Below are positions 12,516 to 26,464 of a stretch of 64,000 bases of DNA, piece after piece. Within the stretch, counting starts at the first letter, position 1; each line of letters begins with the position of its first letter. The DNA lies in the IMG/VR virus record IMGVR_UViG_3300044701_003953, positions 124,001-188,000 of that record. The stretch is one strand, 5' to 3'. The notes below the pieces were generated by a model. The model made no database searches and was not told where the DNA came from. It was given only the letters and a program-made list of their open reading frames with translations. Made by a program: the position numbers and the translations under genes.

Positions 12516-13406
12516 TCAAGTGCCCCAAGCGTTACGCCAGATATCAACTTGTAGACGTGGACTGTAACGCCATCCACGTTCCATGGCCAATTTAGCGACT
12601 TCTTGTGTGTTAAGATTGTAAACTTGCGGAACACCGCCCATTGGCATGAGATACACTGGCCCACCGAATCCCGCCTCACGGAACTCAGCTACGGCACGTT
12701 CTGCGTCCTCTACGTCTTTGCGAGTAGCCACTACGAACTTGACATAAGTGTAACCGATCATCTCATAGCTCTTGATGACCTTGGGATTGATCGCCTTATC
12801 CCAGCTTTCGCCCGAGCATGGTAGTTTTGGACTCACAGAGAATGTGAGCTTGTCGTAGTCTCTACCGTTGCGTGTAAATTCTTGGAACAGGTATTCTTCC
12901 ACTTCAGGATACAAGGCTTGGCTACCATTGGTCTCAAACGTGAGATTGCGGAGTCCGTTGTCTCGACAGCGTTGGATCATGTCGGGATATAGTCGCTGAT
13001 AGCCCAGCAAAGGTTCACCACCAGTTATAACCAAATGTACATCATCATTGGCCCACTCGCCCGACCACTTTCCATTGGGAATCAATGCTTCCATTTTGTC
13101 CACGATCACATCCGGATCGTCTTGCTCATTGAACGACTTAAACTCGGGATAGATGCTCGCGTATGTGTCGCACCCCGTGGTCACTAGTGGTAGATCTTCG
13201 AACTTTTTATACTTGTCGGGATCTGCCTTGACCATGTTGATGATATCCACGACTTCTGGGTTGTGCCCTTCGAAGTCATCTGTACGGCCGAACTTCTTAC
13301 AACGGAAGTTACAACCATATGTTCGGAAGAACACGCTAGGCACACCTGCCCACTTGCCTTCGCCTTGTAGACTATAAAATATTTCTGTGTATGTGATTTT
13401 TTCCAT
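12516..13406 (-). CDS. queE: 7-carboxy-7-deazaguanine synthase (radical SAM)
   Basis: [10 protein letters not shown]...[16 protein letters not shown]...[34 protein letters not shown]; start at Met 13406. Confidence 0.93.
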
Positions 13407-13747
13407 CAATGATTCCTTTTGCCTTGGAACACGCAATTAAACAGCATGTGACTATCTCCATCGTTGATCACACGATGGAACGCACCGTCGGGGATCAATA
13501 CTACATCGCCAGGTCCCACACTAAATGGTTCGCTGGTCTCCTCTCCTACTATCATCTGCCCACGGCCTTGTACGAAAAAGTAAACTTCTTCTTGTCCGAC
13601 ATGCCTATGACCACGAGTCTGTTGATTACGATACAGCCATGTAGAACTCAGCACGAGATTATCGAGGTCGTGGTTATCCCGGAGCACATAAACTTCGTTG
13701 TCCTTGACTACTTCGCCACCGATATCATGTATGTGATATTTCTTCAT
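13406..13747 (-). CDS. Cupin-domain protein
   Basis: [16 protein letters not shown] and [14 protein letters not shown] cupin motifs. Confidence 0.85.
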
Positions 13748-14147
13748 TTAAATATCTCTTCAGTTCTTTGTCAGTGGGCTCAACGGCATAGTTATGTTTG
13801 AAAAAGATCTCATAACTGTCCGAGCCGTATTTGCCGATACCATATAACATTTTAGCATCACTGCCGTCCCAAGTCAAGTAGTCTTCGGTCATACCAAACA
13901 ACCTTTTAGTACGCACATTGACCATCCCCAATGGCCGGATCACTTCTTTGACCATCTCGGGGTCTGCCAATGAAAAGAATGCCGGGACAGGCCAGCGTTC
14001 TAGGAACTCTGGCAGCACCCGTTTCACGGGCTTGCGACCAGTTTGGTTCAGCATGATCACTGCCACCATGTGTTGCCAACGACGGACCCATTCTTCGCGG
14101 CCCGGCAGTTGTTGCTGGACCATCAGATCATCGCGCAATGGCTCCAT
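13725..14147 (-). CDS. MBD4-like HhH-GPD DNA glycosylase
   Basis: VAVIMLNQT, LYGIGKYGSDSYEIF...PTDKELKRY resembles the MBD4 catalytic domain; TAATG overlap at 14145-14149. Confidence 0.8.
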   Translation of the reverse strand: MEPLRDDLMVQQQLPGREEWVRRWQHMVAVIMLNQTGRKPVKRVLPEFLERWPVPAFFSLADPEMVKEVIRPLGMVNVRTKRLFGMTEDYLTWDGSDAKMLYGIGKYGSDSYEIFFKHNYAVEPTDKELKRYLNEEISHT

Positions 14148-14515
14148 TATCGTGTCAGGAACGGTTTGAGTTGTGGGGGAGTCCAACCTTCTGGTTTGAG
14201 AACTTTACCATCTTCGCGTTTACGGACTTTACCGGTGGCTGAGTCGATCTTAGCGAAGTTGGTGCGCATGACTTCGTTCCATGCTCCCTCTGCGTCCATC
14301 CCTGCGGAATGTATGGCACCGATAGTGACGACCAGGATATCGATCAGCGCATCGAGTTGTTCGACCGGGTCAGCGTCCACTAGAGCATGGATGAGTTCTT
14401 GATGCTCTTCGTTGATCAATTTGAGATACATGTTATATTGATCGAGATCGAACTTGCCGACTGTTTGGTCGCAGGCTCGCATGAACCGCTCTTGGTCTTG
14501 GAAAGGATTTGTCAT
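14147..14515 (-). CDS. MazG-like / PRA-PH-like NTP pyrophosphohydrolase
   Basis: LINEEHQEL, EQLDALIDILVV, EVMRTNFAK, KREDGKVLKPEGW. Confidence 0.85.
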   Translation of the reverse strand: MTNPFQDQERFMRACDQTVGKFDLDQYNMYLKLINEEHQELIHALVDADPVEQLDALIDILVVTIGAIHSAGMDAEGAWNEVMRTNFAKIDSATGKVRKREDGKVLKPEGWTPPQLKPFLTR

Positions 14516-14518
14516 TTT

Positions 14519-15043
14519 TTATCCTTCGTAGATGGCTGAGTTGGCTTCGTGCTCAAATACTTCCACAGAGCGTAACTTTACACCTTGTCCCACTGGATAA
14601 CGGGCAGAAAATGTTTTTCCATTGGGCAAGGTATATTCGCGACCTTGTTGATAGGTCTCAAGGATGTCTTGCATGGTGTTGTAGGCCAGTTCGGCGAATT
14701 TTTCGCAGCCCACTGCTTCCACGATGCGTAGGTCGCAAATGCCACCTTGCTCCTGGAGCCCCAACTTGGCCATGTTTTTAAAGATCTCAAGATGGGGATC
14801 ATCTGAGGCCACTACCAAAGTGTGATCGAACATGTATTCGCTCCACTCTTTGAATGCTTTCAGTCCACCGAAGTCCATAACCCAATTGCGATCATCAAGG
14901 GTAGTAGACTCAAATGCAAGACGAATGCCAATGCTATAACCATGCAATAGGCTGCAATGACTGTGAGTGCTACGCCATTGACGGAAACAGCACGAAAGGC
15001 CGCGGTCATTACCATAAGTTTTTGTTGAAAGGAATTTTGCCAT
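14519..15043 (-). CDS. queD: 6-carboxytetrahydropterin synthase
   Basis: HSHCSLLHGYS, WVMDFGGLK, FDHT, GCEKFAE, VEVFEH. Confidence 0.92.
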   Translation of the reverse strand: MAKFLSTKTYGNDRGLSCCFRQWRSTHSHCSLLHGYSIGIRLAFESTTLDDRNWVMDFGGLKAFKEWSEYMFDHTLVVASDDPHLEIFKNMAKLGLQEQGGICDLRIVEAVGCEKFAELAYNTMQDILETYQQGREYTLPNGKTFSARYPVGQGVKLRSVEVFEHEANSAIYEG

Positions 15044-15067
15044 CTCTAGTCTCCTGTGTAAGGGGCA

Positions 15068-15124
15068 AGTTTGATGACACGCAGAATTTATAAAGCGGGA
15101 TGAGCGTCATTGAAAGGCCGCTGG
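15068..15124 (-). ncRNA. Candidate cis-regulatory pseudoknot (preQ1-I-like riboswitch variant) in queD 5' UTR
   Basis: AGCGG/CCGCU stem, AUGACGC/GUGUCAU pseudoknot, CAUC-CC junction and A-rich 3' linker; lies between ATAAATA (15134-15140) and the AGGAG SD. Confidence 0.45.
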
Positions 15125-15148
15125 TTGAACAACTATTTATCGCAGTAG

Positions 15149-16356: not shown

Positions 16357-16363
16357 GATGTTA

Positions 16364-17002
16364 TTATATATTTACGGGTGAACGTTTGTCGAATAATTGC
16401 TTGACCACATCAATGGGCTGATAGAAATGTATACTAAACCAAACTCGAGGGCCTTGATTGTGTACTCTATGATACTGGGTGATGTTGATTATCGTGGGAG
16501 ACATGCTCCTCCCTGAGTAAAAGAAATCGTTTTGGTTATCGGGATCGTATACTACTCCTACAGAGTCACATATATGTAAAGGATAGACTAGACTGGCCTG
16601 ACCATTCTTGATGCTGTCGCGGTGCCTTGGTACATCATGACTAGAAAAACATACAGTGGCAGGCGTGAATGTGAGTTCAGGAAATGCCCGTTTAAATCGG
16701 TCTTCAAGGTCTTCGGTCTCATCGATGCCGCCCATGACGAAGAAGTCTTTGCTGGGACCACTCTTAGAGATCCAACCTCCCCCGGGTATCTCAGCGACTA
16801 CACTAGCGCCATCTTCGTAGAGGATATATTCTCGGTATATGTCAGTCTTGATAAAGTTATTGGCTATATCAGTGACGGTAGTCTTTAGTGCATCCCAGTC
16901 ATGATCGATATAGAGAGCAGGATGGAATCCCAGTAGCATCAGACATGCTCCTCGTTGGGATTCCAACGTCTCCACCATTCTTCCCAAGGAAACACGATCC
17001 AC
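16364..17002 (-). CDS. Possible 2OG-Fe(II) oxygenase-fold protein
   Basis: PRHRD (HxD) followed by YHRV and a distal Arg (RVWFSI). Confidence 0.45.
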   Translation of the reverse strand: MDRVSLGRMVETLESQRGACLMLLGFHPALYIDHDWDALKTTVTDIANNFIKTDIYREYILYEDGASVVAEIPGGGWISKSGPSKDFFVMGGIDETEDLEDRFKRAFPELTFTPATVCFSSHDVPRHRDSIKNGQASLVYPLHICDSVGVVYDPDNQNDFFYSGRSMSPTIINITQYHRVHNQGPRVWFSIHFYQPIDVVKQLFDKRSPVNI

Positions 17003-17514
17003 TGCGGGTCTTCGAATTTGTTGATAGTCTCGGCTGAGTAAGTTGGATGTAGTGTACTTTCACTGCTTTCGTTATCGTAAAGCACAGCCACACGCACATT
17101 ATCTCCCCAGATGCTATTCCAAACGGGATCATTGGGCATACAGCCGCCGGGCCAATCTTGCTTGATCCAGTTTAGTGTAGCACCCGAGTCATTGATATCA
17201 TCGACGATAAGGATTTTCTTTCGAAGTTCGGGGTTGCTATAGCCTGGCATGTCATCAGTGCGATGATACCCAAATGCTTCTTCGGCCATCCAAAGATTGC
17301 TTTCGCAATCACCGTCCTCGCCGCCATCACGCAATTTGACCTTAAGAGTTTCCATTGGGCAATCAAGATATTGGCTGATGAGGTTAGCAGGAACCAACCC
17401 ACCGCGAGTGATGCCTACCACATAGTCGGGCACCCAACGATCCTGCCACATCTGTCTTATCAGTTCTTGGACTTGGCGCTGGACATCTCCCCAGCTCACG
17501 TATACTTTTTTCAT
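16939..17514 (-). CDS. Type I phosphoribosyltransferase (purine-salvage, Gpt-like)
   Basis: VVGITRGGLVPA, ILIVDDINDSGATL, WIVFPWE. Confidence 0.9.
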   Translation of the reverse strand: MKKVYVSWGDVQRQVQELIRQMWQDRWVPDYVVGITRGGLVPANLISQYLDCPMETLKVKLRDGGEDGDCESNLWMAEEAFGYHRTDDMPGYSNPELRKKILIVDDINDSGATLNWIKQDWPGGCMPNDPVWNSIWGDNVRVAVLYDNESSESTLHPTYSAETINKFEDPQWIVFPWEEWWRRWNPNEEHV

Positions 17515-18538: not shown

Positions 18539-18681
18539 TTCTCTGAACCTTTCACCGAGTCGAATACATGTGGTAACCAGCCGGTTAATCCAACCAACCA
18601 GCCATATACGGCAGGAGTGCCCCAACTAACATACATCATGAAAATACAAGAAATTGTGATAAACATAGCGGCTATCTTCAT
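18535..18681 (-). CDS. Small membrane protein, 48 aa (absent from ORF track)
   Basis: MKIAAMFITISCIFMMYVSWGTPAVYGWLVGLTGWLPHVFDSVKGSEK; ATGA overlaps at both ends. Confidence 0.75.
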   Translation of the reverse strand: MKIAAMFITISCIFMMYVSWGTPAVYGWLVGLTGWLPHVFDSVKGSEK

Positions 18682-18889: not shown

Positions 18890-19636
18890 TTATCTAGGTG
18901 CGTAGTCTTGCTGGAGTTTGATGTTGTCGATGAACTCTTTTTTCACGGCGGAGTCCAACTTAAATGCTCCATGTAGAACAGTAGTCTGGGTCAACGAACT
19001 ATGTGCCATGATGCCACGATTCTCGCAACAGCCGTGTGTGGCTTGGATATATACACCAACATCTTTGCTGTCAGTGGCCTTCATGATCTCACGAGCGATA
19101 TCATTACAGAGTTCTTCTTGTAAGGTTCCTCGGCGAGCACACCACTGTGCGATGCGAGTGTATTTGCTGAGGCCGATCAGTTTCTGTGCGGCAAGGATGC
19201 CAATATAAGCAACCCCAACAACGGGTTGATGATGATGGCTACACATACTACGAAGTTCACTACGAACCACGAGCATGCCCTCGTAACGGTCTTCCGAATC
19301 GTTTGGAAACGCTGTGCAATCTGGTGCTGGGTCATATCGACCTCCCATTATTTCGTTGAAGTACATCTTGGCCAATCGACGTGCTGTGCCCTTTGAATTG
19401 GGGTCGGTTTCCCTATCGATGAGCAAACGGTCTAGCACTAGTTCAAACGCTTCGGTGGCTTCGTCGATCAGTCGCGCTTTATCTTCTTCGCTTACATAGT
19501 CGCTGACATTATCGCCTGCCCAGAAACGCTTGTTATCACGTTTCATCTTGAAGCGGATAGCATCGCCTAAGTATGCTTCTTTGTAACCACTGTCGCCTGC
19601 CATCGCATCAAGTGCTGTTTGTTGTTTATCTGTCAA
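18890..19636 (-). CDS. folE: GTP cyclohydrolase I
   Basis: TARRLAKMY, SMCSHHHQP, GLSKYTR, LQEEL, HGCCENRG. Confidence 0.95.
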   Translation of the reverse strand: MTDKQQTALDAMAGDSGYKEAYLGDAIRFKMKRDNKRFWAGDNVSDYVSEEDKARLIDEATEAFELVLDRLLIDRETDPNSKGTARRLAKMYFNEIMGGRYDPAPDCTAFPNDSEDRYEGMLVVRSELRSMCSHHHQPVVGVAYIGILAAQKLIGLSKYTRIAQWCARRGTLQEELCNDIAREIMKATDSKDVGVYIQATHGCCENRGIMAHSSLTQTTVLHGAFKLDSAVKKEFIDNIKLQQDYAPR

Positions 19637-19669: not shown

Positions 19670-20248
19670 TTAGATTATTCTTATTTTCCTGAGGTCAGGA
19701 TACATTTTAGCACGAGGCTCTTCATTATGCGAGCCCAACATTACCAAACCTTTTTCTGCTTCTTCGGGTGTGGGTCTGTAATGATATCCCACTTCGAATA
19801 CTTGCTGTTCCTGCCATGGTGATATATTTAGGTCGCGGCCGTCATATCGTTGGCGGATCACTTTATTATAGAACTGTTCGTCGTCTGTGAGGATAGCACC
19901 ACCACGGCCGATCTCGAGTGGTTTGTCGAAACCAAAGCTCAGGCATTGTAACATACCCGGACGATACATATCACGTCTGAGCAAGCGAGCCGAATCCCAT
20001 ACACGTGAAGAACGGAAGCGATACTCTCCTACCCATTCTTCGTCAATGAGCTGATACTCTATTCCTAATCTTTTAAAAATCATAGGGACAGACAGATAAG
20101 TGAATGCTGTGAACTCTACTTTGCTGGGCTGGTCGTAGCGGAAACAAAGTTCGAGAGCGTGTGTACAACAGTCAGTCATGATAACATAAGGCGCCCCGGT
20201 GTAGTGCGCCAATGCTTGTTCGAAATCTGCTATGCTCTTAAACGACAT
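19670..20248 (-). CDS. Compact DegT/DnrJ/EryC1/StrS-like PLP aminotransferase
   Basis: DCCTHALEL, WDSA, LSFGFDKPLEIGRGGAILTDD (PLP Lys), YDGR, GYHY. Confidence 0.75.
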   Translation of the reverse strand: MSFKSIADFEQALAHYTGAPYVIMTDCCTHALELCFRYDQPSKVEFTAFTYLSVPMIFKRLGIEYQLIDEEWVGEYRFRSSRVWDSARLLRRDMYRPGMLQCLSFGFDKPLEIGRGGAILTDDEQFYNKVIRQRYDGRDLNISPWQEQQVFEVGYHYRPTPEEAEKGLVMLGSHNEEPRAKMYPDLRKIRII

Positions 20249-21209
20249 CTCGGCGATACCATTCCCATGCGTGTTCGATCATTTCATATAGATCGTATTT
20301 AGGCCGCCAACTGCTGGCACTCATCAACTTGTCAGCACTGGCCGTCAGCAAAGCAGGATCGCCGGCACGCCGATCTCCATACTTTTCAGGCCAGCGTGTG
20401 CCAGTGACTTGTTCAGCAGTCCTGACCACTTCTAAGTTGCTGGCACCACGATTGGTGCCGATGTTGTAGACACCATCGAGATCTTCTTCGATAGCCACAC
20501 GGATGGCCGACGCGATATCTGCTACATGGATGTAGTCACGGACGCAAGTGCCGTCGGGCGTGTCAAAGTCAGTGCCATTGATCACGAATTCTTTTTCGTG
20601 TAGCACGGCTTCTAGGTATCTCGCGATGATGTGCGTGGCTTCTTTTTCTTGACCATGCCTGCTTCCAGGATCGGCACCACATACATTGAAGAAACGGAAT
20701 GCGGTATACTTGAGCCCATACGCCATCTTGTAGTCGGCGAGTATCTGTTCAAACATTAGCTTGCTCCAACCATAGGGAGAGATGGGCACAGTGGGTCCAT
20801 CTTCCTTTAGCGGGACGATGCTGGGGTCGGGATTACCATATGTGGCCGCTGAACTAGCGAAAACGATCCTGGTCTCTGGACTGTGTTTACGGACCATATC
20901 CAAGAAACGGATGGAACGTGCCACGTTGTTTTCGTAATATTCGCCGGGGTCGGTCATGGAAGGACCTACTAGGCTAGTTCCAGCACAATGCACGATAGCA
21001 CGTGGTCTATGTTCTTTAATAGCATGTTCAACAGCCGCACTATCAAACCCATCCACGATGGTCTGGTGCCAGTTATTGGACACCGGGCGGCTGCGTCGAT
21101 CTACACCGATGACCCAGTATTTTTTCTGGTCCGCTAGTTCCAACCCAACCTGGCCACCGATGTATCCACCGGCGCCAGTGACTAGGATAGTATCAATACT
21201 TTGATTCAC
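20238..21209 (-). CDS. galE: UDP-glucose 4-epimerase-like NAD-dependent epimerase
   Basis: TGAGGYIG, SSAATYG, YGWSK (YxxxK), FRFFNVCGA, GTCVRDYIHV. Confidence 0.9.
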   Translation of the reverse strand: MNQSIDTILVTGAGGYIGGQVGLELADQKKYWVIGVDRRSRPVSNNWHQTIVDGFDSAAVEHAIKEHRPRAIVHCAGTSLVGPSMTDPGEYYENNVARSIRFLDMVRKHSPETRIVFASSAATYGNPDPSIVPLKEDGPTVPISPYGWSKLMFEQILADYKMAYGLKYTAFRFFNVCGADPGSRHGQEKEATHIIARYLEAVLHEKEFVINGTDFDTPDGTCVRDYIHVADIASAIRVAIEEDLDGVYNIGTNRGASNLEVVRTAEQVTGTRWPEKYGDRRAGDPALLTASADKLMSASSWRPKYDLYEMIEHAWEWYRRDVV

Positions 21210-22371
21210 TAGTATGCTTTCTGTAGTCTACGGTGTTGCGTAACCACTGCTCGCCTTGTCCTTCCAAGATGTCACAGATGCGATCGATGGTGCCATCGTT
21301 ATAGTCTGAAATCTTGCCCATGTCTGGATGGGGTGCTTCTAACAATGGCTTCAGTTTGTTGATAGCATCATCTAGGCTCCATGGAACGTAAAGTCGGCTA
21401 GCATCATTTGAAAAAGTTTCAGGAAAGCTACGATATGCAGGGTAAAGAACATTACACCCCAGAGTGTCGGCTTCGGATACAGTGTTAGATACCCAGTCTT
21501 GAAGAGCACAATTAAAGAGAACACGACTATCATTAAGAAGGGCATAGTAATCATTTTTTTCCAAGTCCTCGTGTAATGACAGCAATCCGCGGGCCTGTAG
21601 GTCTCGTGTCCGCTTCATGTATGAATCGTTGTTGCTACGCAATTTAGCGCCCGAGAAGATGGCAAACTCCACACCCGAATCGGGATAACGGCGATGCCAT
21701 TCTTCGATGAGATCCATGTAAAAGTCAGGTTGCTTTTCTTGGTCCCAGCGAGCGGCAAAGCCAACCCGTAAGGCACGGTCCTGGAAAGGTTTCAATTCAC
21801 CTGGCACACGGCCACGCACTTCGTCCTTGCCAAAAGCAAGTCCGGAGATGTTGTAGATTGGGGCTTCCCAGCCAGCGATTTTCATGTGTGCCACCATCTC
21901 TTCGTTGGTAGCCAGGACCGTGTCTACGAATGAGTCCACCATCTTTTCATAAGTTGACATCCACTTCTGCATGCCCCAGACATGAACGAAATCATCGGGG
22001 TCAATAGTTTGTGCAAGACAACGAACGGCGATACGAGGGCGAAGAGCAGGATCGATTTGATCCATAATGTAAGGCAAGCTCTCGATACCGGGCTGGAACA
22101 TATCTTCAAAATAGATGACATCTTCTCCATTGACTTCTCCTGCTTTCATCTTTTTAACGAGATTCATGAGTTGGCTCATACCAAAGTAGGTTCTGCCATG
22201 AGCATCCAGGACCTGGCCAGTGACGATGGCCTTGTCGTTACTGAGTGTTTCACCTTCGACGATTTCGTAATCGATACCTCGACGCTCAAACACCGCACGA
22301 TTCCACTCTTGTAACTGTAGAGTGTAACGTGCCTTGTAGGGCTCTAGGCCCATGTACCATAACTTACGCAT
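21193..22371 (-). CDS. GT-B (GT4-like) glycosyltransferase
   Basis: VGFAARWDQEKQP, ALQDWVSNTVSEA, YPAYRSFPE; probable start MRKLW at 22371. Confidence 0.75.
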   Translation of the reverse strand: MRKLWYMGLEPYKARYTLQLQEWNRAVFERRGIDYEIVEGETLSNDKAIVTGQVLDAHGRTYFGMSQLMNLVKKMKAGEVNGEDVIYFEDMFQPGIESLPYIMDQIDPALRPRIAVRCLAQTIDPDDFVHVWGMQKWMSTYEKMVDSFVDTVLATNEEMVAHMKIAGWEAPIYNISGLAFGKDEVRGRVPGELKPFQDRALRVGFAARWDQEKQPDFYMDLIEEWHRRYPDSGVEFAIFSGAKLRSNNDSYMKRTRDLQARGLLSLHEDLEKNDYYALLNDSRVLFNCALQDWVSNTVSEADTLGCNVLYPAYRSFPETFSNDASRLYVPWSLDDAINKLKPLLEAPHPDMGKISDYNDGTIDRICDILEGQGEQWLRNTVDYRKHTSESKY

Positions 22372-22939
22372 TGTTTTTCCTGTAATTTCCAATGGTTAAT
22401 TGCCTTACCACAAAAGGTTGATCCAACACCGAATGCACGATGTATTTGGCCATCTTGTCGGAGTCGATCTTTGAAAGTCTAATACGATCATCAGTTGTCC
22501 TGGGAGTATCAACCAGTCCAGGCTTCACTAAGACCACATCACATCTTGCTTCGAGATCGTTCCACGCCCATTGTGATGCCATTTCTAGAGCAGCTTTTTC
22601 GGAAGCATAATGAGCCCGCCCTAAAGGGTGTTGTGGACTGTCGGGGCCCGATCTCATGTCGTTAACTATGCTGCCAATATTAACGATCTTCTTCGGCTGG
22701 TCTCTCCAACTACGCCAGAGCCTAGTAAAAATCTCAACCTGGAAAAAACGTTCATGGGCATTGTTAACGAACATGTCAGCATCGGCTGACATTTCCACGA
22801 TTCTTTTTTGGGTTTCAACATCTGATATATTAAACCCAGCACTCCGAGAGATACCGACCACGTCGTGACCGCGCTTACAAAATTCTTCAGATAAAGATTT
22901 TCCAATCCCCGAAGTATTTCCGGTCACGATGATTTTCAT
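22364..22939 (-). CDS. Short-chain dehydrogenase/reductase
   Basis: IVTGNTSGIG, FVNNA, IVNIGS, YASEK (YxxxK), VKPGLVDT. Confidence 0.88.
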   Translation of the reverse strand: MKIIVTGNTSGIGKSLSEEFCKRGHDVVGISRSAGFNISDVETQKRIVEMSADADMFVNNAHERFFQVEIFTRLWRSWRDQPKKIVNIGSIVNDMRSGPDSPQHPLGRAHYASEKAALEMASQWAWNDLEARCDVVLVKPGLVDTPRTTDDRIRLSKIDSDKMAKYIVHSVLDQPFVVRQLTIGNYRKNNA

Positions 22940-23190
22940 CTCGGTTTCCTCTCAAAACGAGGTTTGTTAGGATCACGTGGCTTCCAGTACCACATATCGC
23001 GGGCCCAGCCTTTGCCACCAATCTTGCGCTGGAACTCGCCCCAGGGACCAAACTCTTTGTAGAGCTTGGCTTCGTCGAACGGGTGGCCGTGCTCCACACA
23101 AAACGCACGGTATTGGTCGAGATCGTCAAAGATCTGGCTGACCTCAGGTTTCATCTTAAGGTATTTTTCCAACCACTTAGGATTAGACAT
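22936..23190 (-). CDS. Hypothetical protein
   Basis: 84 aa, AAGGA RBS. Confidence 0.7.
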   Translation of the reverse strand: MSNPKWLEKYLKMKPEVSQIFDDLDQYRAFCVEHGHPFDEAKLYKEFGPWGEFQRKIGGKGWARDMWYWKPRDPNKPRFERKPR

Positions 23191-23207
23191 GCTACTTTCC
23201 TTTATAT

Positions 23208-23702
23208 TTAGACAGAAAGGGTTTGTGGACGGTGAGTTTCATATTTGATGAGGGCGCCGTTCTCACCATCTTCGGCAACCTCAATCCAGACGCTACGGCC
23301 AGGATACTTTTGTGCGATCTGGAGATACAGATCGTCAGCGATCATTTCACAGGATTTGTAGTTAAGGCTTAGAACTCCACCCTTATTATCGGGATTGGAG
23401 GGATTTCCCTGGGTATACAGGTTCTCCAGCCATCTTTTGAACTGGATGAACTCGATGTCTCGGTCGTTGTGGAACACATCGATCCACACCCTGAAATGGA
23501 AGATATGACGATGAGGATAACCAAGGAACGAAACATCATATTCATCTCCGGTAGCGAGTTGTGGATCTTCGAGTGCCGCTGGGTATTTATGTATGCCTTC
23601 TCGGCGGAAAGTGACCCAGATTTTGCGATCTGCTCGATCCATGATGCGTTCTACTGTGGCTCTTTGTTCTTGATTCATTTTGTTTCCGTTGGGAACGGCC
23701 AT
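23208..23702 (-). CDS. Second T-fold (QueD-like) protein, DpdL-like candidate
   Basis: EGIHKYP, FLGYPHRHIF (LxxxHRHxF), DRDIEFI, SCEMIA, EVAEDGENG. Confidence 0.6.
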   Translation of the reverse strand: MAVPNGNKMNQEQRATVERIMDRADRKIWVTFRREGIHKYPAALEDPQLATGDEYDVSFLGYPHRHIFHFRVWIDVFHNDRDIEFIQFKRWLENLYTQGNPSNPDNKGGVLSLNYKSCEMIADDLYLQIAQKYPGRSVWIEVAEDGENGALIKYETHRPQTLSV

Positions 23703-24184
23703 CCGTTGTTGGGTTTATGTTGATAGGGTTTGATGTTTTCTTCTATAACTGTATTGTATGAATCTGCATCTACGATGTCAATCTTTACTGGACCCAAAAT
23801 GTAGACACAGTCGTCTTCGATCTCCCAATCGTGTTCTCCATCAAACAACCAGGCTGTGCCCCAACGCCCATCTTCATCTTCTACACCATCCCAGAGGCTT
23901 TGGATCTCGGCCTTTTCTTCTTCGGTGAAATCACCAAACCAAGAAAAATATACACTACACAGATCATCTAGCTCGCAACCCCACCCTACCCCGGGATCAC
24001 ATCTCACACGATCCACTTCGTTCGCCCAGACTTCGTCGTCCATGTCGCGGAAGCCTTGCCCCCAACGATAGGTCTCTGTGACATCAAATCCGCGCACGGT
24101 GCCATCGGGTAGGGTTTCGTAGACATCCACGAAGAACTCTACGCTTTTCTTTTCTAAAGGAGTGATGCGATATAGTTGTGCCAT
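23675..24184 (-). CDS. Hypothetical acidic protein
   Basis: 169-aa ORF in operon. Confidence 0.65.
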   Translation of the reverse strand: MAQLYRITPLEKKSVEFFVDVYETLPDGTVRGFDVTETYRWGQGFRDMDDEVWANEVDRVRCDPGVGWGCELDDLCSVYFSWFGDFTEEEKAEIQSLWDGVEDEDGRWGTAWLFDGEHDWEIEDDCVYILGPVKIDIVDADSYNTVIEENIKPYQHKPNNGWPFPTETK

Positions 24185-24705
24185 TATTCTGAGACTTTGT
24201 CGTCTTGATATTTAGACCACGGCGTGAACACCGCACGATTTTTCAAGTCATGTAGGCTGTGGCACCACACACCAGGATTGGTGGCCTGGAAATCTCGGTC
24301 ATCGATCTTGATGGTGGTGTTGTAATTCCAGAGTTTGGCGTAAGGCAGTTTCACGGAGATCATGGGGATGAACAAGTCATGTTCGGTGAGTTTGCCCTCC
24401 AGCAAGCCCTCGGCACAACGAAGATCGAGATCTAATGTGCAGTAGTAACCTTCTTCCAAGAAAGGCCAGATCATGTTTTCCCAATCTTCCCAGGTCTGGA
24501 AATCGTCGAATTCGGGATTGGGGAAACTCTGATTGGCACCAAAGTAGATGTGCTTGATCTCGCGCTCAGCCATGGCCACTTGCACAGTGATCTCGCTAGT
24601 TGGCCGCAAGCCAACCACGAATAGTGTCTCCATGCCCAAGGCAGGTGTGTGTTCTACTTCGCGACCATAAAAGTAAGTCGCTGTTTCGTGTCCTGGTCTA
24701 TCCAT
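24184..24705 (-). CDS. Hypothetical protein of the deazaguanine cluster
   Basis: GREVEHTPALGMETLFV, HIYFGANQSF, ATNPGVWCH; lies between the transglycosylase and the T-fold gene. Confidence 0.65.
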   Translation of the reverse strand: MDRPGHETATYFYGREVEHTPALGMETLFVVGLRPTSEITVQVAMAEREIKHIYFGANQSFPNPEFDDFQTWEDWENMIWPFLEEGYYCTLDLDLRCAEGLLEGKLTEHDLFIPMISVKLPYAKLWNYNTTIKIDDRDFQATNPGVWCHSLHDLKNRAVFTPWSKYQDDKVSE

Positions 24706-24708
24706 TTT

Positions 24709-24915
24709 TTACTCTTCGTCGAAGTTGACTCGTTCGTGCTCTTCTTCCCATTGCTTCTTCTTCATTTTAGCGATTTCGTCTTTTAAGAGCAACTTCTTTT
24801 TCTTCAGAGTCTGGAGATGTTCGTCCGAAAAGTTTCCAGACGTCTCAAGTTTAACAATTTGTTCGTCCAAAAGGCGGTGTGCTTCTTCTAGATGGGCGAT
24901 CCGATTTTCATACAT
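24709..24915 (-). CDS. YdcH/DUF465-like small coiled-coil protein
   Basis: LEEAHRLLDEQI...LKKKKLLLKDEI; GAGGAG RBS, start 24915. Confidence 0.7.
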   Translation of the reverse strand: MYENRIAHLEEAHRLLDEQIVKLETSGNFSDEHLQTLKKKKLLLKDEIAKMKKKQWEEEHERVNFDEE

Positions 24916-26464
24916 TTGGGTTCTCCTCGAGTTGATCAAGTTTCGATTCGTCAAGTTCGGGTTCTTCGGAAACCTCTTCTTCTACAGTCTCAAATAAAGC
25001 GTTAAACATGGTCATGGAGTTCTTGGCTTTCTTTCCAGAGAAGCCGCGTGTGCCTACGATCTCCATCCAATATTTGTCATACTTTTCGATTATAGCTTCG
25101 CTGGTAGCGCGATCCGGTGCAGTGAAGATCTCTTCTACGATGTCTTGGAAACGATCATGGCTGGGACCTGAGTAACGCATCATGGCAGGATATTCGCCGG
25201 CGTCAAAGCGTCTATTGGCTTCTTGGACGGCAGTGATATGCTGATAGACATTATGTCCCATGAGCAAAGCATACGAGAAACTATCCCAGGATGTCTTACC
25301 TTCTTTGCCCACTTTGTTGAGATCACCGGGCTTGTAGATACAGATGTCTTTCATGCGCAACAGGTCGCTGACTGGACTGTCTTGCCATATGGGATAGATG
25401 CCGTCAGCTATCACTCCTTGCCGCCACTGTCGGGTGTCGGTGGCGTATTTTTTGTCATCGGCTGAAGGAGCCATGCGGTACGACCATTTGGAGTCGTGTT
25501 CGAAGACGTTTTCGAAGTAGACTTGTCCGTTCGCTGTTGCGAGGAATGGACTGGCGCAGTCAAAAGAGATGGTAAACGATGGGTTGACATATTTCCTCAC
25601 GGCACGTTGTAAGATAGTGAGCAAGACTGCCCACTCCAATTTTGATGTTCCCAAGAAGTGCATCCAGTCATGTTTGCCCTCCTGTAGGAGTCCATCGTAG
25701 CGCAATGCCACCAAGCGTCGTAATACTAAGTGGACATCACACATATTCTGACCACCCATAGCCCAACCGTTGAAATGCGTGTCGGGATACTTTGCGGGAT
25801 CACAATATTCTTTCATCGTTTCATACCAATCATCTGCTTCAGCGTGATTAGCACCTTGTAGCACGTTGAGGAATTTCACTCCACCGTTCTTGACACCCCG
25901 ACGGTGGGTCATGAAATACTCGTTGTTGTATTTTGTAGCGTTGACTGCTTCTTCGTGTGTGGTGATACCACAGGCCCGAGATGCTTTTTCATCATGCACT
26001 ACCCAGGTCGGGATATCAAGGATCATGCCGTAGTCGGCGATGCCATCCAACCATTTCAGCACCGCTTCTCGTTTCTTCTGCGCTTTGGGACAACCAGAAC
26101 CGGCCTTCCAATCGCCTTCCCAGAGTCCTTTAGCGATCTGGAATCCACCCGAGTCACCTAGGATCAATGTGCCAGGATCACGGTTACGCACCATGTCCTC
26201 CGACCAGTCCTGCTTGTTGAGATCTAAGTTAGCGTGTCCACCCGAGTATAGACTCCACTTATAAGGGAAAAGTCCTTTGGCATCGTTGAGCCAGTTCAAC
26301 TCTTCCATGTCCTTCATGCCCGGCGGGAAACGAGCAGGATCTACATAAGGGCCGTTTACAGGGTCGCGTTGCTTGCCTATGAACGTGGCATAGAAGCCCG
26401 AGATAGCCGGCAAAAACACAGCATAGTCATTTTGTTTGGAAGTCAGGTTATCTCGGTTTGTCAT
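24908..26464 (-). CDS. dpdA: TGT-family guanine transglycosylase, probably DNA-directed (DpdA-like)
   Basis: LGDSGGFQI, LDIPTW, NVLQG, GWAMGG, HFLGTS, SFDCASP; no CxCxxC Zn motif seen; near queE/queD/folE. Confidence 0.7.
   Translation of the reverse strand: MTNRDNLTSKQNDYAVFLPAISGFYATFIGKQRDPVNGPYVDPARFPPGMKDMEELNWLNDAKGLFPYKWSLYSGGHANLDLNKQDWSEDMVRNRDPGTLILGDSGGFQIAKGLWEGDWKAGSGCPKAQKKREAVLKWLDGIADYGMILDIPTWVVHDEKASRACGITTHEEAVNATKYNNEYFMTHRRGVKNGGVKFLNVLQGANHAEADDWYETMKEYCDPAKYPDTHFNGWAMGGQNMCDVHLVLRRLVALRYDGLLQEGKHDWMHFLGTSKLEWAVLLTILQRAVRKYVNPSFTISFDCASPFLATANGQVYFENVFEHDSKWSYRMAPSADDKKYATDTRQWRQGVIADGIYPIWQDSPVSDLLRMKDICIYKPGDLNKVGKEGKTSWDSFSYALLMGHNVYQHITAVQEANRRFDAGEYPAMMRYSGPSHDRFQDIVEEIFTAPDRATSEAIIEKYDKYWMEIVGTRGFSGKKAKNSMTMFNALFETVEEEVSEEPELDESKLDQLEENPNV

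What the first reader, a model, noticed from the sequence alone, without database searches (positions are those of the whole stretch)
12516..26464. 7-deazaguanine pathway without queC, with a DpdL-like T-fold gene and an embedded sugar-modification block
queE, queD, folE and a TGT/DpdA-like transglycosylase are present. FolE-QueD-QueE yields CDG (established). No queC/queF is seen in the window. A second T-fold protein carries LxxxHRHxF, which I recall as the signature of the proposed CDG decarboxylase DpdL. Between folE and that gene, in one co-oriented and tightly packed run, lie a GT-B glycosyltransferase, a GalE-like epimerase, a DegT-like aminotransferase and an SDR. Inference: CDG or 7-deazaguanine is inserted into DNA and may be further decorated with an (amino)sugar, a hypermodification I do not know to be chemically described.
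Basis: partly seen in the sequence, partly recalled or inferred. Interest (0 to 1): 0.8.

Follow-up and report, generated by a model that had tools for sequence, protein, structure and literature searches.

The report
Deazaguanine DNA pathway with glycosyltransferase partner
A giant freshwater phage carries the genes that replace guanine in DNA with 7-deazaguanine, and one of them (DpdL) is paired in many phages with its own glycosyltransferase, which suggests a sugar-bearing form of this base that nobody has measured.

Summary
On the minus strand of 12516-26464 lie QueE, QueD, FolE, a second T-fold protein with LGYPHRHIF (the published DpdL signature LxxxHRHxF) and a 518-aa TGT-superfamily protein. 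An SDR, a GT-B glycosyltransferase, a GalE-like epimerase and a short DegT-like protein sit between DpdL and FolE. No QueC or QueF homolog is in the window.

The core is the known QueC-less "dDG" pathway of Cellulophaga phage phiST.

What is new is the glycosyltransferase. It is a divergent GT4-type enzyme, and its full-length subfamily lies beside DpdL in 77 of 80 close metagenomic relatives. It also lies within about 4 kb of DpdL in six cultured phage lineages (BUCT-ZZ01, ACP17, PA5oct, Phosso, Xanthomonas X1, Burkholderia BCSR5), and in four of five remote metagenomic members. phiST, whose DNA is plain dDG, lacks it.

GalE and the short DegT are additions specific to this phage clade, and the SDR is rare. 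They lie in an insertion-prone island that also takes unrelated genes.

Glycosylated 7-deazaguanine is therefore a well-founded hypothesis, but it is unproven: the acceptor is unknown and no chemistry exists.

One caveat to "no queC": two Asn-synthetase/QueC-superfamily PP-loop paralogs lie at 32958-35965.

The parts
24908..26464 (-). DpdA-like DNA-guanine transglycosylase candidate (518 aa, TGT superfamily)
   Evidence: It carries GDSGGFQ, and D104 and D302 (SFDCAS) are invariant. The AF2 model has pLDDT 87.8, and its three best PDB matches are all TGTs: 6yry 1.6e-6, 1j2b 2.5e-5, 9hn7 2.4e-3. hhalign against DpdA3 of ACP17/BUCT-ZZ01/phiST gives E 2.4e-5 at 75% probability. It has no Pfam or PDB sequence hit. 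Homologs are PA5oct gp168 (35%), Phosso and Vibrio phage 2.275.O, the first and last shown to sit in 7-deazaguanine clusters. It is present in 72 of 80 related loci.
24184..24705 (-). Unknown 173-aa protein, a conserved companion of dpdA
   Evidence: It is a homolog of ACP17 gp122, the gene just upstream of ACP17 dpdA3 (E 5e-11; profile 2.4e-44). It occurs in 55 of 80 loci. No Pfam or PHROG match. The ESM Atlas search was uninformative.
23208..23702 (-). DpdL-like T-fold protein (proposed CDG decarboxylase)
   Evidence: It reads LGYPHRHIF, matching LxxxHRHxF (motif in PMC10516641). It matches phrog_17812 at 1.4e-34. Identity is 63% to Phosso, 51% to ACP17 DpdL and 33% to phiST DpdL. The motif is kept in 72 of 77 relatives. 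hhalign against the QueD family gives E 4.8e-5. Invariant residues are H38, H64, H66, E84, S117-C118-E119 and E144-D145.
22936..23190 (-). Small basic protein (84 aa) between dpdL and the sugar genes
   Evidence: It occurs in 77 of 80 close relatives and in none of the distant clusters. No family match. Its pI is 9.4.
22364..22939 (-). Short classical SDR (191 aa)
   Evidence: It matches adh_short at 2.9e-9. TGxxxGIG and YxxxK can be read in the sequence. It is rare: 5-6 of 80 loci, but abutting the GT when present. PA5oct gp164 is a comparable short SDR in its own cluster.
21193..22392 (-). DpdL-coupled GT4-type GT-B glycosyltransferase (probable start ATG 22371, 392 aa)
   Evidence: The AF2 model has pLDDT 94.5. 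Foldseek finds BshA, MshA, glycogen synthase, GlgM and SPS at E around 1e-11. Glycos_transf_1 is matched by 38 of 54 family members. R208, K213 and E300 are conserved. The family has 823 representatives at 50% identity. It lies next to DpdL in 77 of 80 loci, within about 4 kb of DpdL in 6 cultured lineages, and in 4 of 5 remote contigs.
20238..21209 (-). GalE-like UDP-hexose 4-epimerase (323 aa)
   Evidence: It matches Epimerase at 1e-53. It aligns full-length to UDP-glucose 4-epimerases, with 8wxk at 3.5e-63. It matches phrog_540 at 1.7e-69. GxxGxxG, Ser and YxxxK can be read in the sequence. It occurs in 63 of 80 loci at about 42% identity and in no distant cluster.
19670..20248 (-). Half-size DegT/DnrJ/EryC1-like protein (192 aa)
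   Evidence: It matches the Pfam DegT family at 6.6e-12. It aligns only to residues 35-98 and 177-236 of a 382-aa aminotransferase. The PLP lysine context is kept (SFGFDKPL against SFHPRKTL). The protein is 192-222 aa in all 34 loci that have it, so it is a conserved short form and not a pseudogene.
18890..19636 (-). FolE, GTP cyclohydrolase I (248 aa)
   Evidence: It matches GTP_cyclohydroI at 2.5e-38. It occurs in 59 of 80 loci at 78% identity.
16939..17514 (-). Purine (6-oxopurine-type) phosphoribosyltransferase (191 aa)
   Evidence: It matches Pribosyltran at 1e-14. PDB matches are purine PRTs: 1vdm at 1.1e-10 and GpT-2 at 4e-8. Homologs sit in the PA5oct (gp163) and BUCT-ZZ01 clusters. 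It occurs in 22 of 80 loci within reach.
14519..15043 (-). QueD, CPH4 synthase (174 aa)
   Evidence: It matches PTPS at 6e-13 and phrog_2389 at 5e-35. Its motif reads CSLLHGY (CxxxHGY), as in the QueD of the five cultured DpdL phages whose QueD was found, phiST included.
14147..14515 (-). MazG/PRA-PH-like nucleotide pyrophosphohydrolase (122 aa)
   Evidence: It matches PRA-PH at 1.6e-10. phiST has a MazG-like gene next to its dpdL (PMC10516641). It occurs in 10 of 80 loci, in some directly upstream of the GT.
12516..13436 (-). QueE, CDG synthase (306 aa, radical SAM)
   Evidence: It matches phrog_2076 'QueE-like radical SAM domain' at 1.8e-49 over the full length. The Pfam Radical_SAM match is weak. 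It occurs in 42 of 80 loci within reach.
26448..27074 (-). Sulfotransferase-like protein abutting dpdA (208 aa); possible accessory, link unproven
   Evidence: It matches Sulfotransfer_2 at 24.7 bits, above the cut-off of 22. It matches phrog_3347 'Galactose-3-O-sulfotransferase' at 2.2e-6. It occurs in 37 of 80 loci.

Best explanation
This is the 7-deazaguanine DNA-modification module of an uncultured freshwater jumbo phage of about 338 kb.

Established for the enzyme families: FolE, QueD and QueE turn GTP into 7-carboxy-7-deazaguanine (CDG).

Proposed in the literature, not proven: DpdL removes the carboxyl group to give 7-deazaguanine.

Inferred here:
- The large TGT-like DpdA exchanges guanine in phage DNA for the modified base.
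- The purine phosphoribosyltransferase probably salvages the released guanine back towards GTP.
- The dedicated GT4-type glycosyltransferase, genetically locked to dpdL across very distant phages, is an integral step of this pathway.
- Most likely the GT transfers a hexose or amino-hexose from a UDP-sugar onto the 7-deazaguanine moiety. This could happen on the free base or an intermediate before DpdA inserts it, or on the base once it is in DNA.
- In this clade the UDP-sugar donor would be tailored by GalE, the short DegT-like protein and sometimes an SDR.

Rough likelihoods: dDG-type pathway acting on DNA, about 0.8. GT belonging to that pathway, about 0.7. A glycosylated 7-deazaguanine actually present in virion DNA, about 0.35. 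GalE/DegT/SDR feeding that GT, about 0.35.
For: Core pathway:
- All core genes were identified.
- The DpdL motif and its homology to phiST and ACP17 DpdL hold.
- phiST, with the same QueC-less set, has 100% dG replaced by dDG (PMC10516641).
- The DpdA-like protein has a TGT fold, TGT motifs and a profile link to DpdA3.
- It sits next to polB and the sliding clamp here, in PA5oct and in Vibrio phage 2.275.O.
- PA5oct DNA resists restriction enzymes with G-containing sites (PMC12191111).

GT identity: it is a confident GT-B/GT4 fold with donor-binding R/K/E residues conserved.

GT coupling to DpdL:
- In 80 IMG/VR loci the order DpdA-(u173)-DpdL-u84-GT is kept in nearly all 21-kb loci listed (GT 80, DpdL 77, DpdA 72).
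- The GT profile hits a gene within about 4 kb of DpdL in BUCT-ZZ01, ACP17, PA5oct, Phosso, Xanthomonas X1 and Burkholderia BCSR5.
- Remote family members at 30-33% identity have DpdL directly adjacent in 4 of 5 contigs.
- Every full-length GT hit among 50,697 phage records is in a DpdL phage.

Sugar-donor genes: GalE and the short DegT follow the GT in most relatives, and extra NDP-sugar epimerase/dehydratases and SDRs occur in the same island.

Consistent with the literature: Cui et al. could not obtain dDG from dpdL plus dpdA of phiST or ACP17 in E. coli. They suggested that other unknown enzymes may be needed.
Against: - No chemical data exist for any GT-bearing DpdL phage.
- 7-deazaguanine offers no hydroxyl. 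A GT4 enzyme forming an N-, C- or acyl-glycoside on it would be unprecedented (my own knowledge).
- phiST makes plain dDG with DpdL and no GT, so the GT is not needed for dDG itself.
- Four other DpdL lineages (RHph_I1_18, Ahp1, D479, Bakedbeans) show no GT within 10 kb.
- The GT's nearest structural neighbours act on small molecules, not nucleic acids.
- GalE and DegT are missing from all distant clusters and from one subclade.
- The DegT-like protein lacks about half of the fold.
- The GT-FolE island also carries unrelated genes: Bax1-I, TctC, TauD.
- A partial-length relative of the GT in Xanthomonas phage PhiXhv-12 sits with GlmS and an LmbE-like deacetylase and no DpdL nearby.
- The DpdA3 link is only 75% probability, and there is no direct match to phiST DpdA3.
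Confidence: 0.55

Rival explanations
1. The phage makes plain dDG, as phiST does. The GT, GalE, DegT-like and SDR genes are auxiliary metabolic or surface-glycan genes, acting on host envelope or virion glycosylation. They merely sit in an insertion-prone spot of the replication module.
For: - phiST reaches complete dDG replacement without any GT.
- The window is full of unrelated auxiliary genes, including isocitrate lyase, transporters, ClpB, DnaJ and DD-carboxypeptidase.
- The GT-FolE interval varies from 0.7 to 8.7 kb among relatives and takes in Bax1-I, TctC and TauD genes.
- GalE and DegT are clade-specific.
- Nearly all genes are co-oriented, so co-orientation is not informative.
Against: For the GT itself this is hard to hold:
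- The DpdL-GT pair recurs in lineages that share almost nothing else (T4-like cyanophage, Busanvirus, Wroclawvirus, a 469-kb Sinorhizobium phage, remote metagenomic contigs). In most of those clusters no other sugar-related gene was recognised.
- All full-length family members found in cultured phages are in DpdL phages.
Confidence: 0.2
2. The base is built into DNA through nucleotides rather than by base exchange, or in addition to it. The purine phosphoribosyltransferase would convert DG or CDG to the ribonucleotide, as TubE does with CDG in tubercidin biosynthesis (my recollection). MazG- and HIT-like enzymes would reshape the nucleotide pool. The GT would act on the free base or nucleotide.
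For: - A purine PRT recurs in the clusters of this clade, PA5oct and BUCT-ZZ01.
- MazG-like genes sit in the window and in phiST.
- Replacement in DpdA3 phages is complete.
- The GT's structural neighbours use small-molecule acceptors.
Against: - The PRT is equally well explained as salvage of the guanine released by DpdA.
- A DpdA-family gene is present in every such cluster where one could be recognised, and the field regards insertion as post-replicative.
- The PRT is missing from ACP17, Phosso, X1 and BCSR5 within the regions read.
- The MazG and HIT genes are poorly conserved (10 and 5 of 80 loci).
Confidence: 0.1
3. DpdL, the GT and the SDR form a pterin-glycoside branch off FolE. This would parallel GTP cyclohydrolase I, PTPS, sepiapterin reductase and pteridine glycosyltransferase, which make glycosylated tetrahydrobiopterin in cyanobacteria and Chlorobium. 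The product would be a soluble cofactor or pigment, not a DNA base.
For: - The enzyme types match that pathway. Pteridine glycosyltransferases using UDP-Glc, UDP-Xyl or UDP-GlcNAc are known (PMC5683033, PMC4133829).
- The closest cultured relative of the GT (65% identity) is in a phage of Synechococcus elongatus PCC 7942.
- The GT resembles small-molecule GT4 enzymes.
Against: - DpdL lacks the catalytic cysteine of PTPS/QueD, having Leu instead.
- The DpdL-GT pair travels with QueE and, where recognisable, DpdA, which a pterin branch does not need.
- The SDR is rare.
- No pteridine glycosyltransferase appeared among PDB sequence or fold matches.
- phiST links DpdL to dDG.
Confidence: 0.07
4. 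CDG is not only decarboxylated. dCDG in DNA would serve as a carboxyl handle that the two Asn-synthetase-like PP-loop paralogs amidate, possibly with an amino sugar. This would be analogous to CmoY acting on 5-carboxymethylcytosine.
For: - Two paralogous PP-loop proteins (SGGIDST, 42% identical) lie 6.5-9.5 kb upstream of dpdA.
- The ESM Atlas places them in large viral clusters next to Asn_synthase/QueC families.
- A phage Asn-synthetase homolog ligates glycine to a carboxylated DNA base (PMC12783734).
- No CmoX-like SPPC methyltransferase is in the window to supply another carboxyl handle.
Against: - They are absent from the 80 related loci and from all cultured phages searched, so they are not part of the conserved module.
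- They lie in a low-GC (36%) stretch of apparently separate origin.
- DpdL argues for decarboxylation.
- A CmoX could lie in the unsearched roughly 274 kb.
Confidence: 0.05

Closest known systems
dDG pathway of Cellulophaga phage phiST (FolE, QueD, QueE, DpdL, DpdA3, MazG-like; Cui, Hutinet et al., NAR 2023, PMC10516641)
   Same: It has the same QueC-less gene set and the same DpdL signature LxxxHRHxF. The QueD variant CxxxHGY is shared, a MazG-like gene is nearby, and a TGT-superfamily transglycosylase is present.
   Different: phiST has no glycosyltransferase, no ACP17-gp122-like gene, no PRT and no sugar-nucleotide genes. Its DpdA3 is 259 aa and shows no direct similarity to the 518-aa protein here.
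Uncharacterised clusters of Acidovorax phage ACP17 (gp122-gp126), Pseudomonas jumbo phage PA5oct (gp162-gp168), Sinorhizobium phage Phosso, Synechococcus phage BUCT-ZZ01, Xanthomonas phage X1 and Burkholderia phage BCSR5
   Same: They share the DpdL-GT pair close to QueE and FolE, with a DpdA-family gene identified in ACP17, PA5oct, BUCT-ZZ01 and X1. PA5oct also has the same large DpdA type, a PRT, a short SDR and the polB-clamp-DpdA order.
   Different: None carries GalE, the short DegT or the sulfotransferase-like gene. GT identity is only 21-25%, except 65% for BUCT-ZZ01. The DNA chemistry is unknown. PA5oct is known only to resist enzymes with G-containing sites.
QTMAN/QTGAL, the glycosyltransferases that mannosylate or galactosylate queuosine in tRNA (Zhao et al., Cell 2023, cited in PMC11782371)
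   Same: This is the only known glycosylation of a 7-deazaguanine derivative within a nucleic acid. Bacterial 'tRNA-queuosine alpha-mannosyltransferase' clusters (QTMAN_N plus Glycos_transf_1) are among the nearest named neighbours in the ESM Atlas (score 0.97).
   Different: The acceptor there is a hydroxyl of the cyclopentenediol of queuosine, which cannot be made here without QueC, QueF and the later queuosine genes. No member of this family matches the QTMAN_N domain, even at E up to 10. The substrate there is tRNA, not DNA.
T4 alpha- and beta-glucosyltransferases and other phage DNA glycosyltransferases acting on 5-hydroxymethylpyrimidines
   Same: These are phage-encoded GT-B enzymes that decorate a modified base with a UDP-sugar after replication, as counter-defence. 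Sugar diversification between related phages is also seen there.
   Different: Their acceptor is a hydroxymethyl group on a pyrimidine. These enzymes are not among the close fold matches: 'DNA alpha-glucosyltransferase' entries appear only at ranks 31 and 49 of the viral library, among generic GT-B hits.
GT4 retaining glycosyltransferases for small acceptors (BshA, MshA, GlgM, sucrose-phosphate synthase, OtsA)
   Same: These are the best fold matches, at E around 1e-11 and TM 0.6-0.7. The C-terminal Glycos_transf_1 domain has conserved Arg, Lys and Glu.
   Different: The N-terminal acceptor domain has its own invariant motifs (LEPYxxRYT, D56, R60, D90, Y101, D127). It matches closely only the proteins of DpdL phages (TM 0.83-0.87 and 0.74-0.84).
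CmoA/CmoX/CmoY 5-carboxymethylcytosine amide hypermodification (PMC12783734)
   Same: A phage Asn-synthetase-like ligase decorates a carboxylated DNA base. The window has two such PP-loop paralogs.
   Different: No CmoX-like methyltransferase motif is in the window. The paralogs are not conserved with the deazaguanine module.

Membership tests
QueC-less dDG-type 7-deazaguanine DNA modification system (phiST type) | FolE, QueD and QueE present (route to CDG) | tested here: met
   Pfam and PHROG matches. All three are conserved in related loci.
QueC-less dDG-type 7-deazaguanine DNA modification system (phiST type) | DpdL: a QueD paralog with LxxxHRHxF in place of CxxxHGH | tested here: met
   The protein reads LGYPHRHIF. 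It is homologous to phiST and ACP17 DpdL. hhalign against QueD gives E 4.8e-5. The motif definition is in PMC10516641.
QueC-less dDG-type 7-deazaguanine DNA modification system (phiST type) | Absence of QueC and QueF | tested here: inconclusive
   None was found in the 64-kb window or in 80 related loci. About 274 kb of the source contig was not read. Two PP-loop proteins of the Asn-synthetase/QueC superfamily are present.
QueC-less dDG-type 7-deazaguanine DNA modification system (phiST type) | dG in virion DNA replaced by dDG | not testable with these tools
   This needs LC-MS/MS of virion DNA. No nanopore run holding this sequence was listed.
TGT/DpdA superfamily | TIM-barrel TGT fold with the DSGGFQ aspartate and the catalytic aspartate motif | tested here: met
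   The three best PDB fold matches are TGTs. D104 (DSGGFQ) and D302 (SFDCAS) are invariant and aligned to the DpdA3 motifs.
DpdA3 subfamily | Sequence-level membership with phiST, Campylobacter-phage and ACP17 DpdA3 | tested here: inconclusive
   hhalign gives 75% probability and E 2.4e-5 over 193 columns. BLASTP gives 0.019 to ACP17 and nothing to phiST. My DpdA3 profile does not hit the PA5oct-type proteins. This may be a separate large-DpdA branch.
DNA- versus tRNA-directed transglycosylase | Acts on DNA | not testable with these tools
   Context only: it is adjacent to polB and the clamp, its relatives sit in phage deazaguanine clusters, and PA5oct DNA is restriction-resistant.
GT-B / GT4 glycosyltransferases | Two Rossmann-like domains, a Glycos_transf_1 C-terminal domain and donor-binding Arg/Lys/Glu | tested here: met
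   The AF2 model has pLDDT 94.5. Foldseek gives E around 1e-11 to GT4/GT5/GT20 enzymes. Glycos_transf_1 is matched by 38 of 54 members. R208 and K213 are invariant and E300 is nearly invariant.
QTMAN (tRNA-queuosine mannosyltransferase) | QTMAN_N (PF12038) N-terminal domain | tested here: not met
   No member of 54 matches PF12038 even at E up to 10. The only support is a language-model proximity lead.
T4-type DNA glucosyltransferases | Specific structural or sequence similarity to AGT or BGT | tested here: not met
   They are absent from the top PDB matches. Only generic GT-B similarity is seen in the viral library, at ranks 31 and 49.
UDP-glucose/galactose 4-epimerase (GalE) | Full-length extended SDR with GxxGxxG, catalytic Ser and YxxxK | tested here: met
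   E 3.5e-63 to 8wxk over residues 6-320. The motifs are readable in the sequence. Substrate (UDP-Glc or UDP-GlcNAc) was not determined.
DegT/DnrJ/EryC1 sugar aminotransferases | Complete fold-type I PLP domain of about 370 aa with the Schiff-base lysine | tested here: not met
   The lysine context is kept, but only two segments align (35-98 and 177-236 of 382). About 80 internal residues and the C-terminal domain are missing. The short form is conserved.
QueC (preQ0 synthase), tested on the PP-loop paralogs at 32958-35965 | N-terminal PP-loop plus C-terminal zinc-binding cysteines, about 230 aa, Pfam QueC | tested here: not met
   The PP-loop is at residue ~100 of 386/389 aa. There is no Pfam hit and no cysteine cluster in the sequence. 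tblastn with a phage QueC finds only noise. The superfamily resemblance comes only from the ESM Atlas.
Pteridine glycoside pathway | Catalytically competent PTPS (active-site Cys) and a pteridine glycosyltransferase | tested here: not met
   DpdL has Leu in place of the Cys. No pteridine glycosyltransferase appeared among the sequence or fold matches.

The most novel reading that the evidence does not exclude
In this abundant freshwater jumbo-phage clade, and in cultured phages such as BUCT-ZZ01, ACP17, PA5oct and Phosso, guanine in virion DNA is replaced by a glycosylated 7-deazaguanine. This would be the first sugar-bearing purine known in DNA. It would be made by a DpdL-coupled GT4 enzyme through an N-, C- or acyl-glycosidic bond that has no precedent for this enzyme family. 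Clade-specific tailoring of the sugar (epimerised, aminated, perhaps sulfated) would parallel the glucosyl and arabinosyl diversity of T-even phage hydroxymethylcytosine.
Probability: 0.3. Interest if true: 0.9.

Novelty: new variant of a known kind. Interest (0 to 1): 0.7.

Why it matters
The dDG branch is the least understood of the 7-deazaguanine DNA modifications. DpdL's activity has never been shown, and dpdL plus dpdA from phiST or ACP17 gave no dDG in E. coli.

A dedicated glycosyltransferase, and a gp122-like protein, travel with dpdL and dpdA in many lineages. That gives concrete candidates for the missing components. It also gives a testable prediction for the unidentified G modification of PA5oct-type therapeutic jumbo phages.

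If the sugar is on the base, it would be a new class of DNA hypermodification: a glycosylated purine. That would bear on restriction evasion, on modification-sensing defence nucleases, and on how such DNA behaves in sequencing.

The family is large. There are more than 8,000 near-identical-clade proteins and 823 cluster representatives at 50% identity, almost all viral. These phages are common in freshwater metagenomes.

Tried and rejected
- Megablast of the region against 50,697 phage records found nothing, so there is no close cultured relative.
- Sequence searches of the DpdA-like protein and its profile against Pfam and PDB found nothing. Identity had to come from the fold and from a profile-profile comparison.
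- A scan of IMG/VR with PA5oct gp168 gave no loci.
- ESM Atlas on the 173-aa protein was uninformative, with scores near 0.70.
- Isoelectric points do not separate DNA-binding from other roles, because the DpdA-like protein is as acidic as the GT.
- The promoter scan was not above chance (17 found, 20.7 expected). The only notable site is an 11/12 match upstream of dpdL.
- I looked for a broken DegT gene and rejected that idea: the short form is 192-222 aa in all 34 relatives.
- I looked for a CmoX-like SPPC motif to explain the PP-loop ligases and found none.
- The N-terminal part of the Bakedbeans DpdL fusion gave only low-complexity PDB matches.
- No nanopore run was listed. The runs that hold the sequence are freshwater DNA metagenomes kept as contigs. 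Contigs cannot show base modification.
- QTMAN membership was tested and not met.

Full report
**What is there**

The interval 12516-26464 lies in a window that is almost entirely transcribed from the minus strand. In the order of transcription the genes are:

| Coordinates | Size | Identity |
|---|---|---|
| 24908-26464 | 518 aa | DpdA-like, carries GDSGGFQ |
| 24709-24954 | 81 aa | small coiled-coil protein |
| 24184-24705 | 173 aa | unknown |
| 23675-24184 | 169 aa | unknown |
| 23208-23702 | 164 aa | DpdL-like, carries LGYPHRHIF |
| 22936-23190 | 84 aa | basic protein |
| 22364-22939 | 191 aa | classical SDR |
| 21193-22392 | 399 aa | glycosyltransferase; homologs start at the ATG at 22371 |
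| 20238-21209 | 323 aa | GalE-like epimerase |
| 19670-20248 | 192 aa | short DegT-like protein |
| 18890-19636 | 248 aa | FolE |

Downstream comes a looser stretch with a cupin-type protein, a purine phosphoribosyltransferase (16939-17514), a HIT protein and a DD-carboxypeptidase with a hydrophobic N-terminus that looks like a signal peptide. Then follow QueD (14519-15043), a MazG-like protein, a small HhH-GPD protein, a cupin and QueE (12516-13436).

From the 84-aa gene through the DegT-like gene the reading frames overlap by 4, 8, 17 and 11 nt.

Upstream of dpdA lie a sulfotransferase-like gene, the sliding clamp, a radical-SAM/SPASM protein, a methyltransferase and the family-B DNA polymerase.

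**Where it comes from**

No cultured phage is close at the DNA level. An identical DpdA-like protein is encoded on a 337,740-bp contig of JGI metagenome 3300047564. The sequence is held almost completely by freshwater metagenome runs from two samples of two studies.

More than 8,000 proteins share 77-97% identity with the GT or the DpdA-like protein, on contigs up to about 370 kb. So this is a member of an abundant clade of freshwater jumbo phages. It is distantly related in its replication module to PA5oct-type and Phosso-type jumbo phages (polB 47-50%).

**The core pathway is a known kind**

PMC10516641 states that the QueD motif CxxxHGH is changed to LxxxHRHxF in DpdL. It also reports DpdL in phages with DpdA, FolE, QueD and QueE but no QueC.

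- The window protein is 33% identical to phiST DpdL, 51% to ACP17 DpdL and 63% to a Phosso protein.
- The motif is kept in 72 of 77 close relatives.
- The family aligns to QueD by profile comparison at E 4.8e-5, with three invariant histidines and conserved glutamates.
- phiST, the only chemically analysed type, has all dG replaced by 2'-deoxy-7-deazaguanine.

The 518-aa protein has no Pfam or PDB sequence match. Other evidence places it in the TGT superfamily:
- A model of good confidence (pLDDT 87.8) finds three TGTs as its three best PDB matches, and only generic TIM barrels after them.
- Its family profile aligns to DpdA3 of ACP17, BUCT-ZZ01 and phiST at E 2.4e-5. This puts DSGGFQ, LQG, HFLGTS and SFDCAS on the corresponding DpdA3 motifs.
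- Its homologs in PA5oct and Vibrio phage 2.275.O sit in 7-deazaguanine gene clusters next to polB and the clamp.

I file it under the TGT/DpdA superfamily. Whether it is DpdA3 or a separate large branch stays open.

**No QueC, with a caveat**

A phage QueC and QueF find nothing in the window or in 80 related loci. Pfam on about 60 ORFs shows none.

A motif scan did find two paralogous 386/389-aa proteins with a PP-loop (SGGIDST) at 34805-35965 and 32958-34127. They have no Pfam match. The ESM Atlas places them in large viral clusters next to Asn-synthetase/QueC-type families.

They are not QueC: the length and architecture are wrong and there is no zinc cysteine cluster. They are also not conserved with the module. 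But they are amide-ligase-like, and a phage Asn-synthetase homolog is now known to decorate a carboxylated DNA base (PMC12783734). About 274 kb of the genome was not read.

**The glycosyltransferase is the real finding**

The family has 823 representatives at 50% identity. Evidence for its fold and family:
- An alignment of 54 diverse members gives a model with pLDDT 94.5.
- That model matches retaining GT-B enzymes of the GT4/GT5/GT20 type (BshA, MshA, glycogen synthase, GlgM, sucrose-phosphate synthase, OtsA) at E around 1e-11.
- Thirty-eight of the 54 members match Pfam Glycos_transf_1.
- The Arg and Lys that bind the donor diphosphate in such enzymes are invariant, and the Glu of the family motif is nearly so.
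- The N-terminal domain has its own invariant residues. In the viral structure library it closely matches only two proteins, one of them ACP17 gp124.

Genomic context ties the GT to DpdL:
- In 80 IMG/VR loci the order polB, clamp, DpdA, 173-aa protein, DpdL, 84-aa protein, GT is kept in nearly all the 21-kb loci listed (GT 80, DpdL 77, DpdA 72).
- A profile of the family finds a member within about 4 kb of DpdL in BUCT-ZZ01 (directly adjacent), ACP17 (gp124, between dpdA3 and dpdL), PA5oct (gp167, between the large dpdA and dpdL), Phosso, Xanthomonas X1 and Burkholderia BCSR5.
- I looked up five remote members (30-33% identity) on their contigs. Four have DpdL directly beside the GT, and three of those also carry QueE, with QueD, FolE or a DpdA-like gene variously alongside. 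The fifth lies on contigs of 3-5.5 kb.
- All full-length matches among 50,697 phage records are in phages that also have DpdL.

The paper that defined DpdL does not mention a glycosyltransferase: 'glycosyl' does not occur in its text.

phiST has no such gene. Four further DpdL lineages show none within 10 kb. So the GT is not needed for dDG as such.

A partial-length relative lacks the N-terminal 77 profile positions. It occurs in Xanthomonas phages of the PhiXhv-12 type, next to GlmS and an LmbE-like deacetylase and without DpdL nearby. This looks like an outgroup, and it hints at an N-acetylhexosamine donor.

**The other sugar genes**

- GalE is a full-length UDP-hexose 4-epimerase by sequence.
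- The DegT-like protein aligns only to two segments of the aminotransferase fold. It keeps the lysine context and is 192-222 aa in all 34 relatives that have it, so it is a conserved short form of unknown competence.
- GalE is present in 63 and the short DegT in 34 of 80 loci, usually right after the GT. One subclade lacks them, and no distant DpdL-GT cluster has them.
- The SDR is in 5-6 of 80 loci, abutting the GT in about half of those cases. PA5oct has a comparable short SDR.
- The interval between GT and FolE ranges from 0.7 to 8.7 kb among relatives. It holds further NDP-sugar epimerase/dehydratases, an SDR and a radical-SAM protein, but also Bax1-I, TctC and TauD-type genes.
- Some relatives, and BUCT-ZZ01, carry a second GT-B protein in the cluster.

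This fits a variable sugar-tailoring island attached to a fixed GT. It equally fits a hot-spot for insertions. I rate the link of GalE, DegT and SDR to the GT at about one in three.

**How it most likely works**

Shown by homology: FolE, QueD and QueE give CDG. Proposed in the literature and consistent here: DpdL gives 7-deazaguanine.

Inferred:
- The DpdA-like enzyme exchanges guanine in DNA for the modified base.
- The purine phosphoribosyltransferase matches 6-oxopurine PRTs and recurs in PA5oct and BUCT-ZZ01. It returns the released guanine to the GTP pool that feeds FolE.
- The GT carries out a step coupled to DpdL.

Two variants cannot be separated. The GT may act on the free base or an intermediate, and a large DpdA then inserts a bulky base, as eukaryotic TGT does with queuine. 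Or the GT may act on the base already in DNA, as T4 glucosyltransferases do.

The small-molecule character of the nearest structural relatives and the tight DpdL-GT pairing lean slightly to the first variant.

The main difficulty is chemical: 7-deazaguanine has no hydroxyl. The bond would have to be to N2, to the electron-rich C7/C8, or to the carboxylate of CDG. None of these is known for a GT4 enzyme (my own knowledge).

**Comparison and novelty**

The module is a member of the known QueC-less 7-deazaguanine systems. It is a variant in having a dedicated, widely conserved glycosyltransferase and, in this clade, sugar-nucleotide genes.

The nearest functional analogy is the glycosylation of queuosine in tRNA by QTMAN and QTGAL. 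Bacterial QTMAN-like clusters are among the nearest named neighbours in the ESM Atlas. Membership is not met, though, because no member matches the QTMAN_N domain.

I score it as a new variant of a known kind, with interest 0.7. The glycosylated-base reading is a hypothesis at roughly 0.3-0.35. It can be tested directly on cultured phages.

Noticed in passing
window 32958-36699 (minus strand): This is a tandem duplicated two-gene cassette in a low-GC (36%) stretch. Two PP-loop (SGGIDST) Asn-synthetase/QueC-superfamily paralogs of 386 and 389 aa are 42% identical. Each is preceded by a distantly related 245/275-aa unknown protein. They have no homolog in cultured phages or in the 80 related loci. 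They are possible amide ligases for a carboxylated base.
   Followed up: partly
window 26448-27074: A Sulfotransfer_2 / galactose-3-O-sulfotransferase-like gene overlaps the start of dpdA. It is present in 37 of 80 relatives at only about 30% identity. Whether it acts on the same sugar is unknown.
   Followed up: partly
window 27859-29895: A radical-SAM/SPASM protein (367 aa) and a class-I SAM methyltransferase-fold protein (310 aa) are wedged between the sliding clamp and polB. The methyltransferase is in 39 of 80 relatives.
   Followed up: no
window 14519-15043; L004, L005, L086, L088, L089: The QueD of the five cultured DpdL phages where it was found, phiST included, and of most close relatives reads CxxxHGY instead of the canonical CxxxHGH. 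Two remote contigs keep HGH.
   Followed up: partly
L001:17763-18140 and L090:9968-10399: The DpdL of PA5oct and of Aeromonas phage Ahp1 reads HFH (LGYPHFHYF, LGDRHFHYF) rather than HRH, so the arginine of the signature is not universal.
   Followed up: no
L092:9212-10363: In Vibrio phage Bakedbeans the DpdL domain is the C-terminal third of a 383-aa protein. The N-terminal 260 residues gave only low-complexity matches.
   Followed up: partly
L100:7747-10981 (Xanthomonas phage PhiXhv-12; also PhiXhv-15/-16, Ep026, Erwinia phage Ep032): A partial-length relative of the GT sits in a GlmS, LmbE-like deacetylase, GT triplet with no DpdL, DpdA, QueD/E or FolE within 10 kb. It looks like a separate amino-sugar conjugation system in 227-kb jumbo phages.
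   Followed up: partly
L086:11010-12353 and 15 related loci (e.g. L011, L041, L060, L072): A second GT-B protein (447 aa in BUCT-ZZ01) lies between FolE and DpdA3 in the cyanophage cluster. It has homologs in some freshwater relatives, including several loci of the subclade that lacks GalE and DegT.
   Followed up: partly
window 15149-15967: A DD-carboxypeptidase (Peptidase_S11, 6e-36) with a hydrophobic N-terminus that looks like a signal peptide sits in the middle of the deazaguanine gene run. It is present in only 2 of 80 relatives and is clearly an unrelated insertion.
   Followed up: no
window 13725-14186: A 153-aa HhH-GPD-superfamily protein (just below the Pfam cut-off) lies between MazG and the cupin, and is present in 3 of 80 relatives. 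This is of interest because host END nucleases use an inactive EndoIII-like domain to sense modified G in PA5oct (PMC12191111).
   Followed up: no
window 667-1236, 2998-7898, 36829-38112, 44466-47682, 54441-58536: The window has a rich auxiliary gene content. It includes DHFR, a dienelactone hydrolase, MoxR-type AAA plus vWA/metallopeptidase, two DctP-type and one TctA-type transporter components, isocitrate lyase, ClpB-like and DnaJ chaperones, a LuxR-type regulator and PhoH.
   Followed up: no
L087:5843-6376 (Xanthomonas phage X1): A 177-aa 'PAPS reductase family' (PP-loop) protein lies directly after FolE in the X1 DpdL-GT-DpdA cluster. This is another PP-loop enzyme in a QueC-less cluster.
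   Followed up: no
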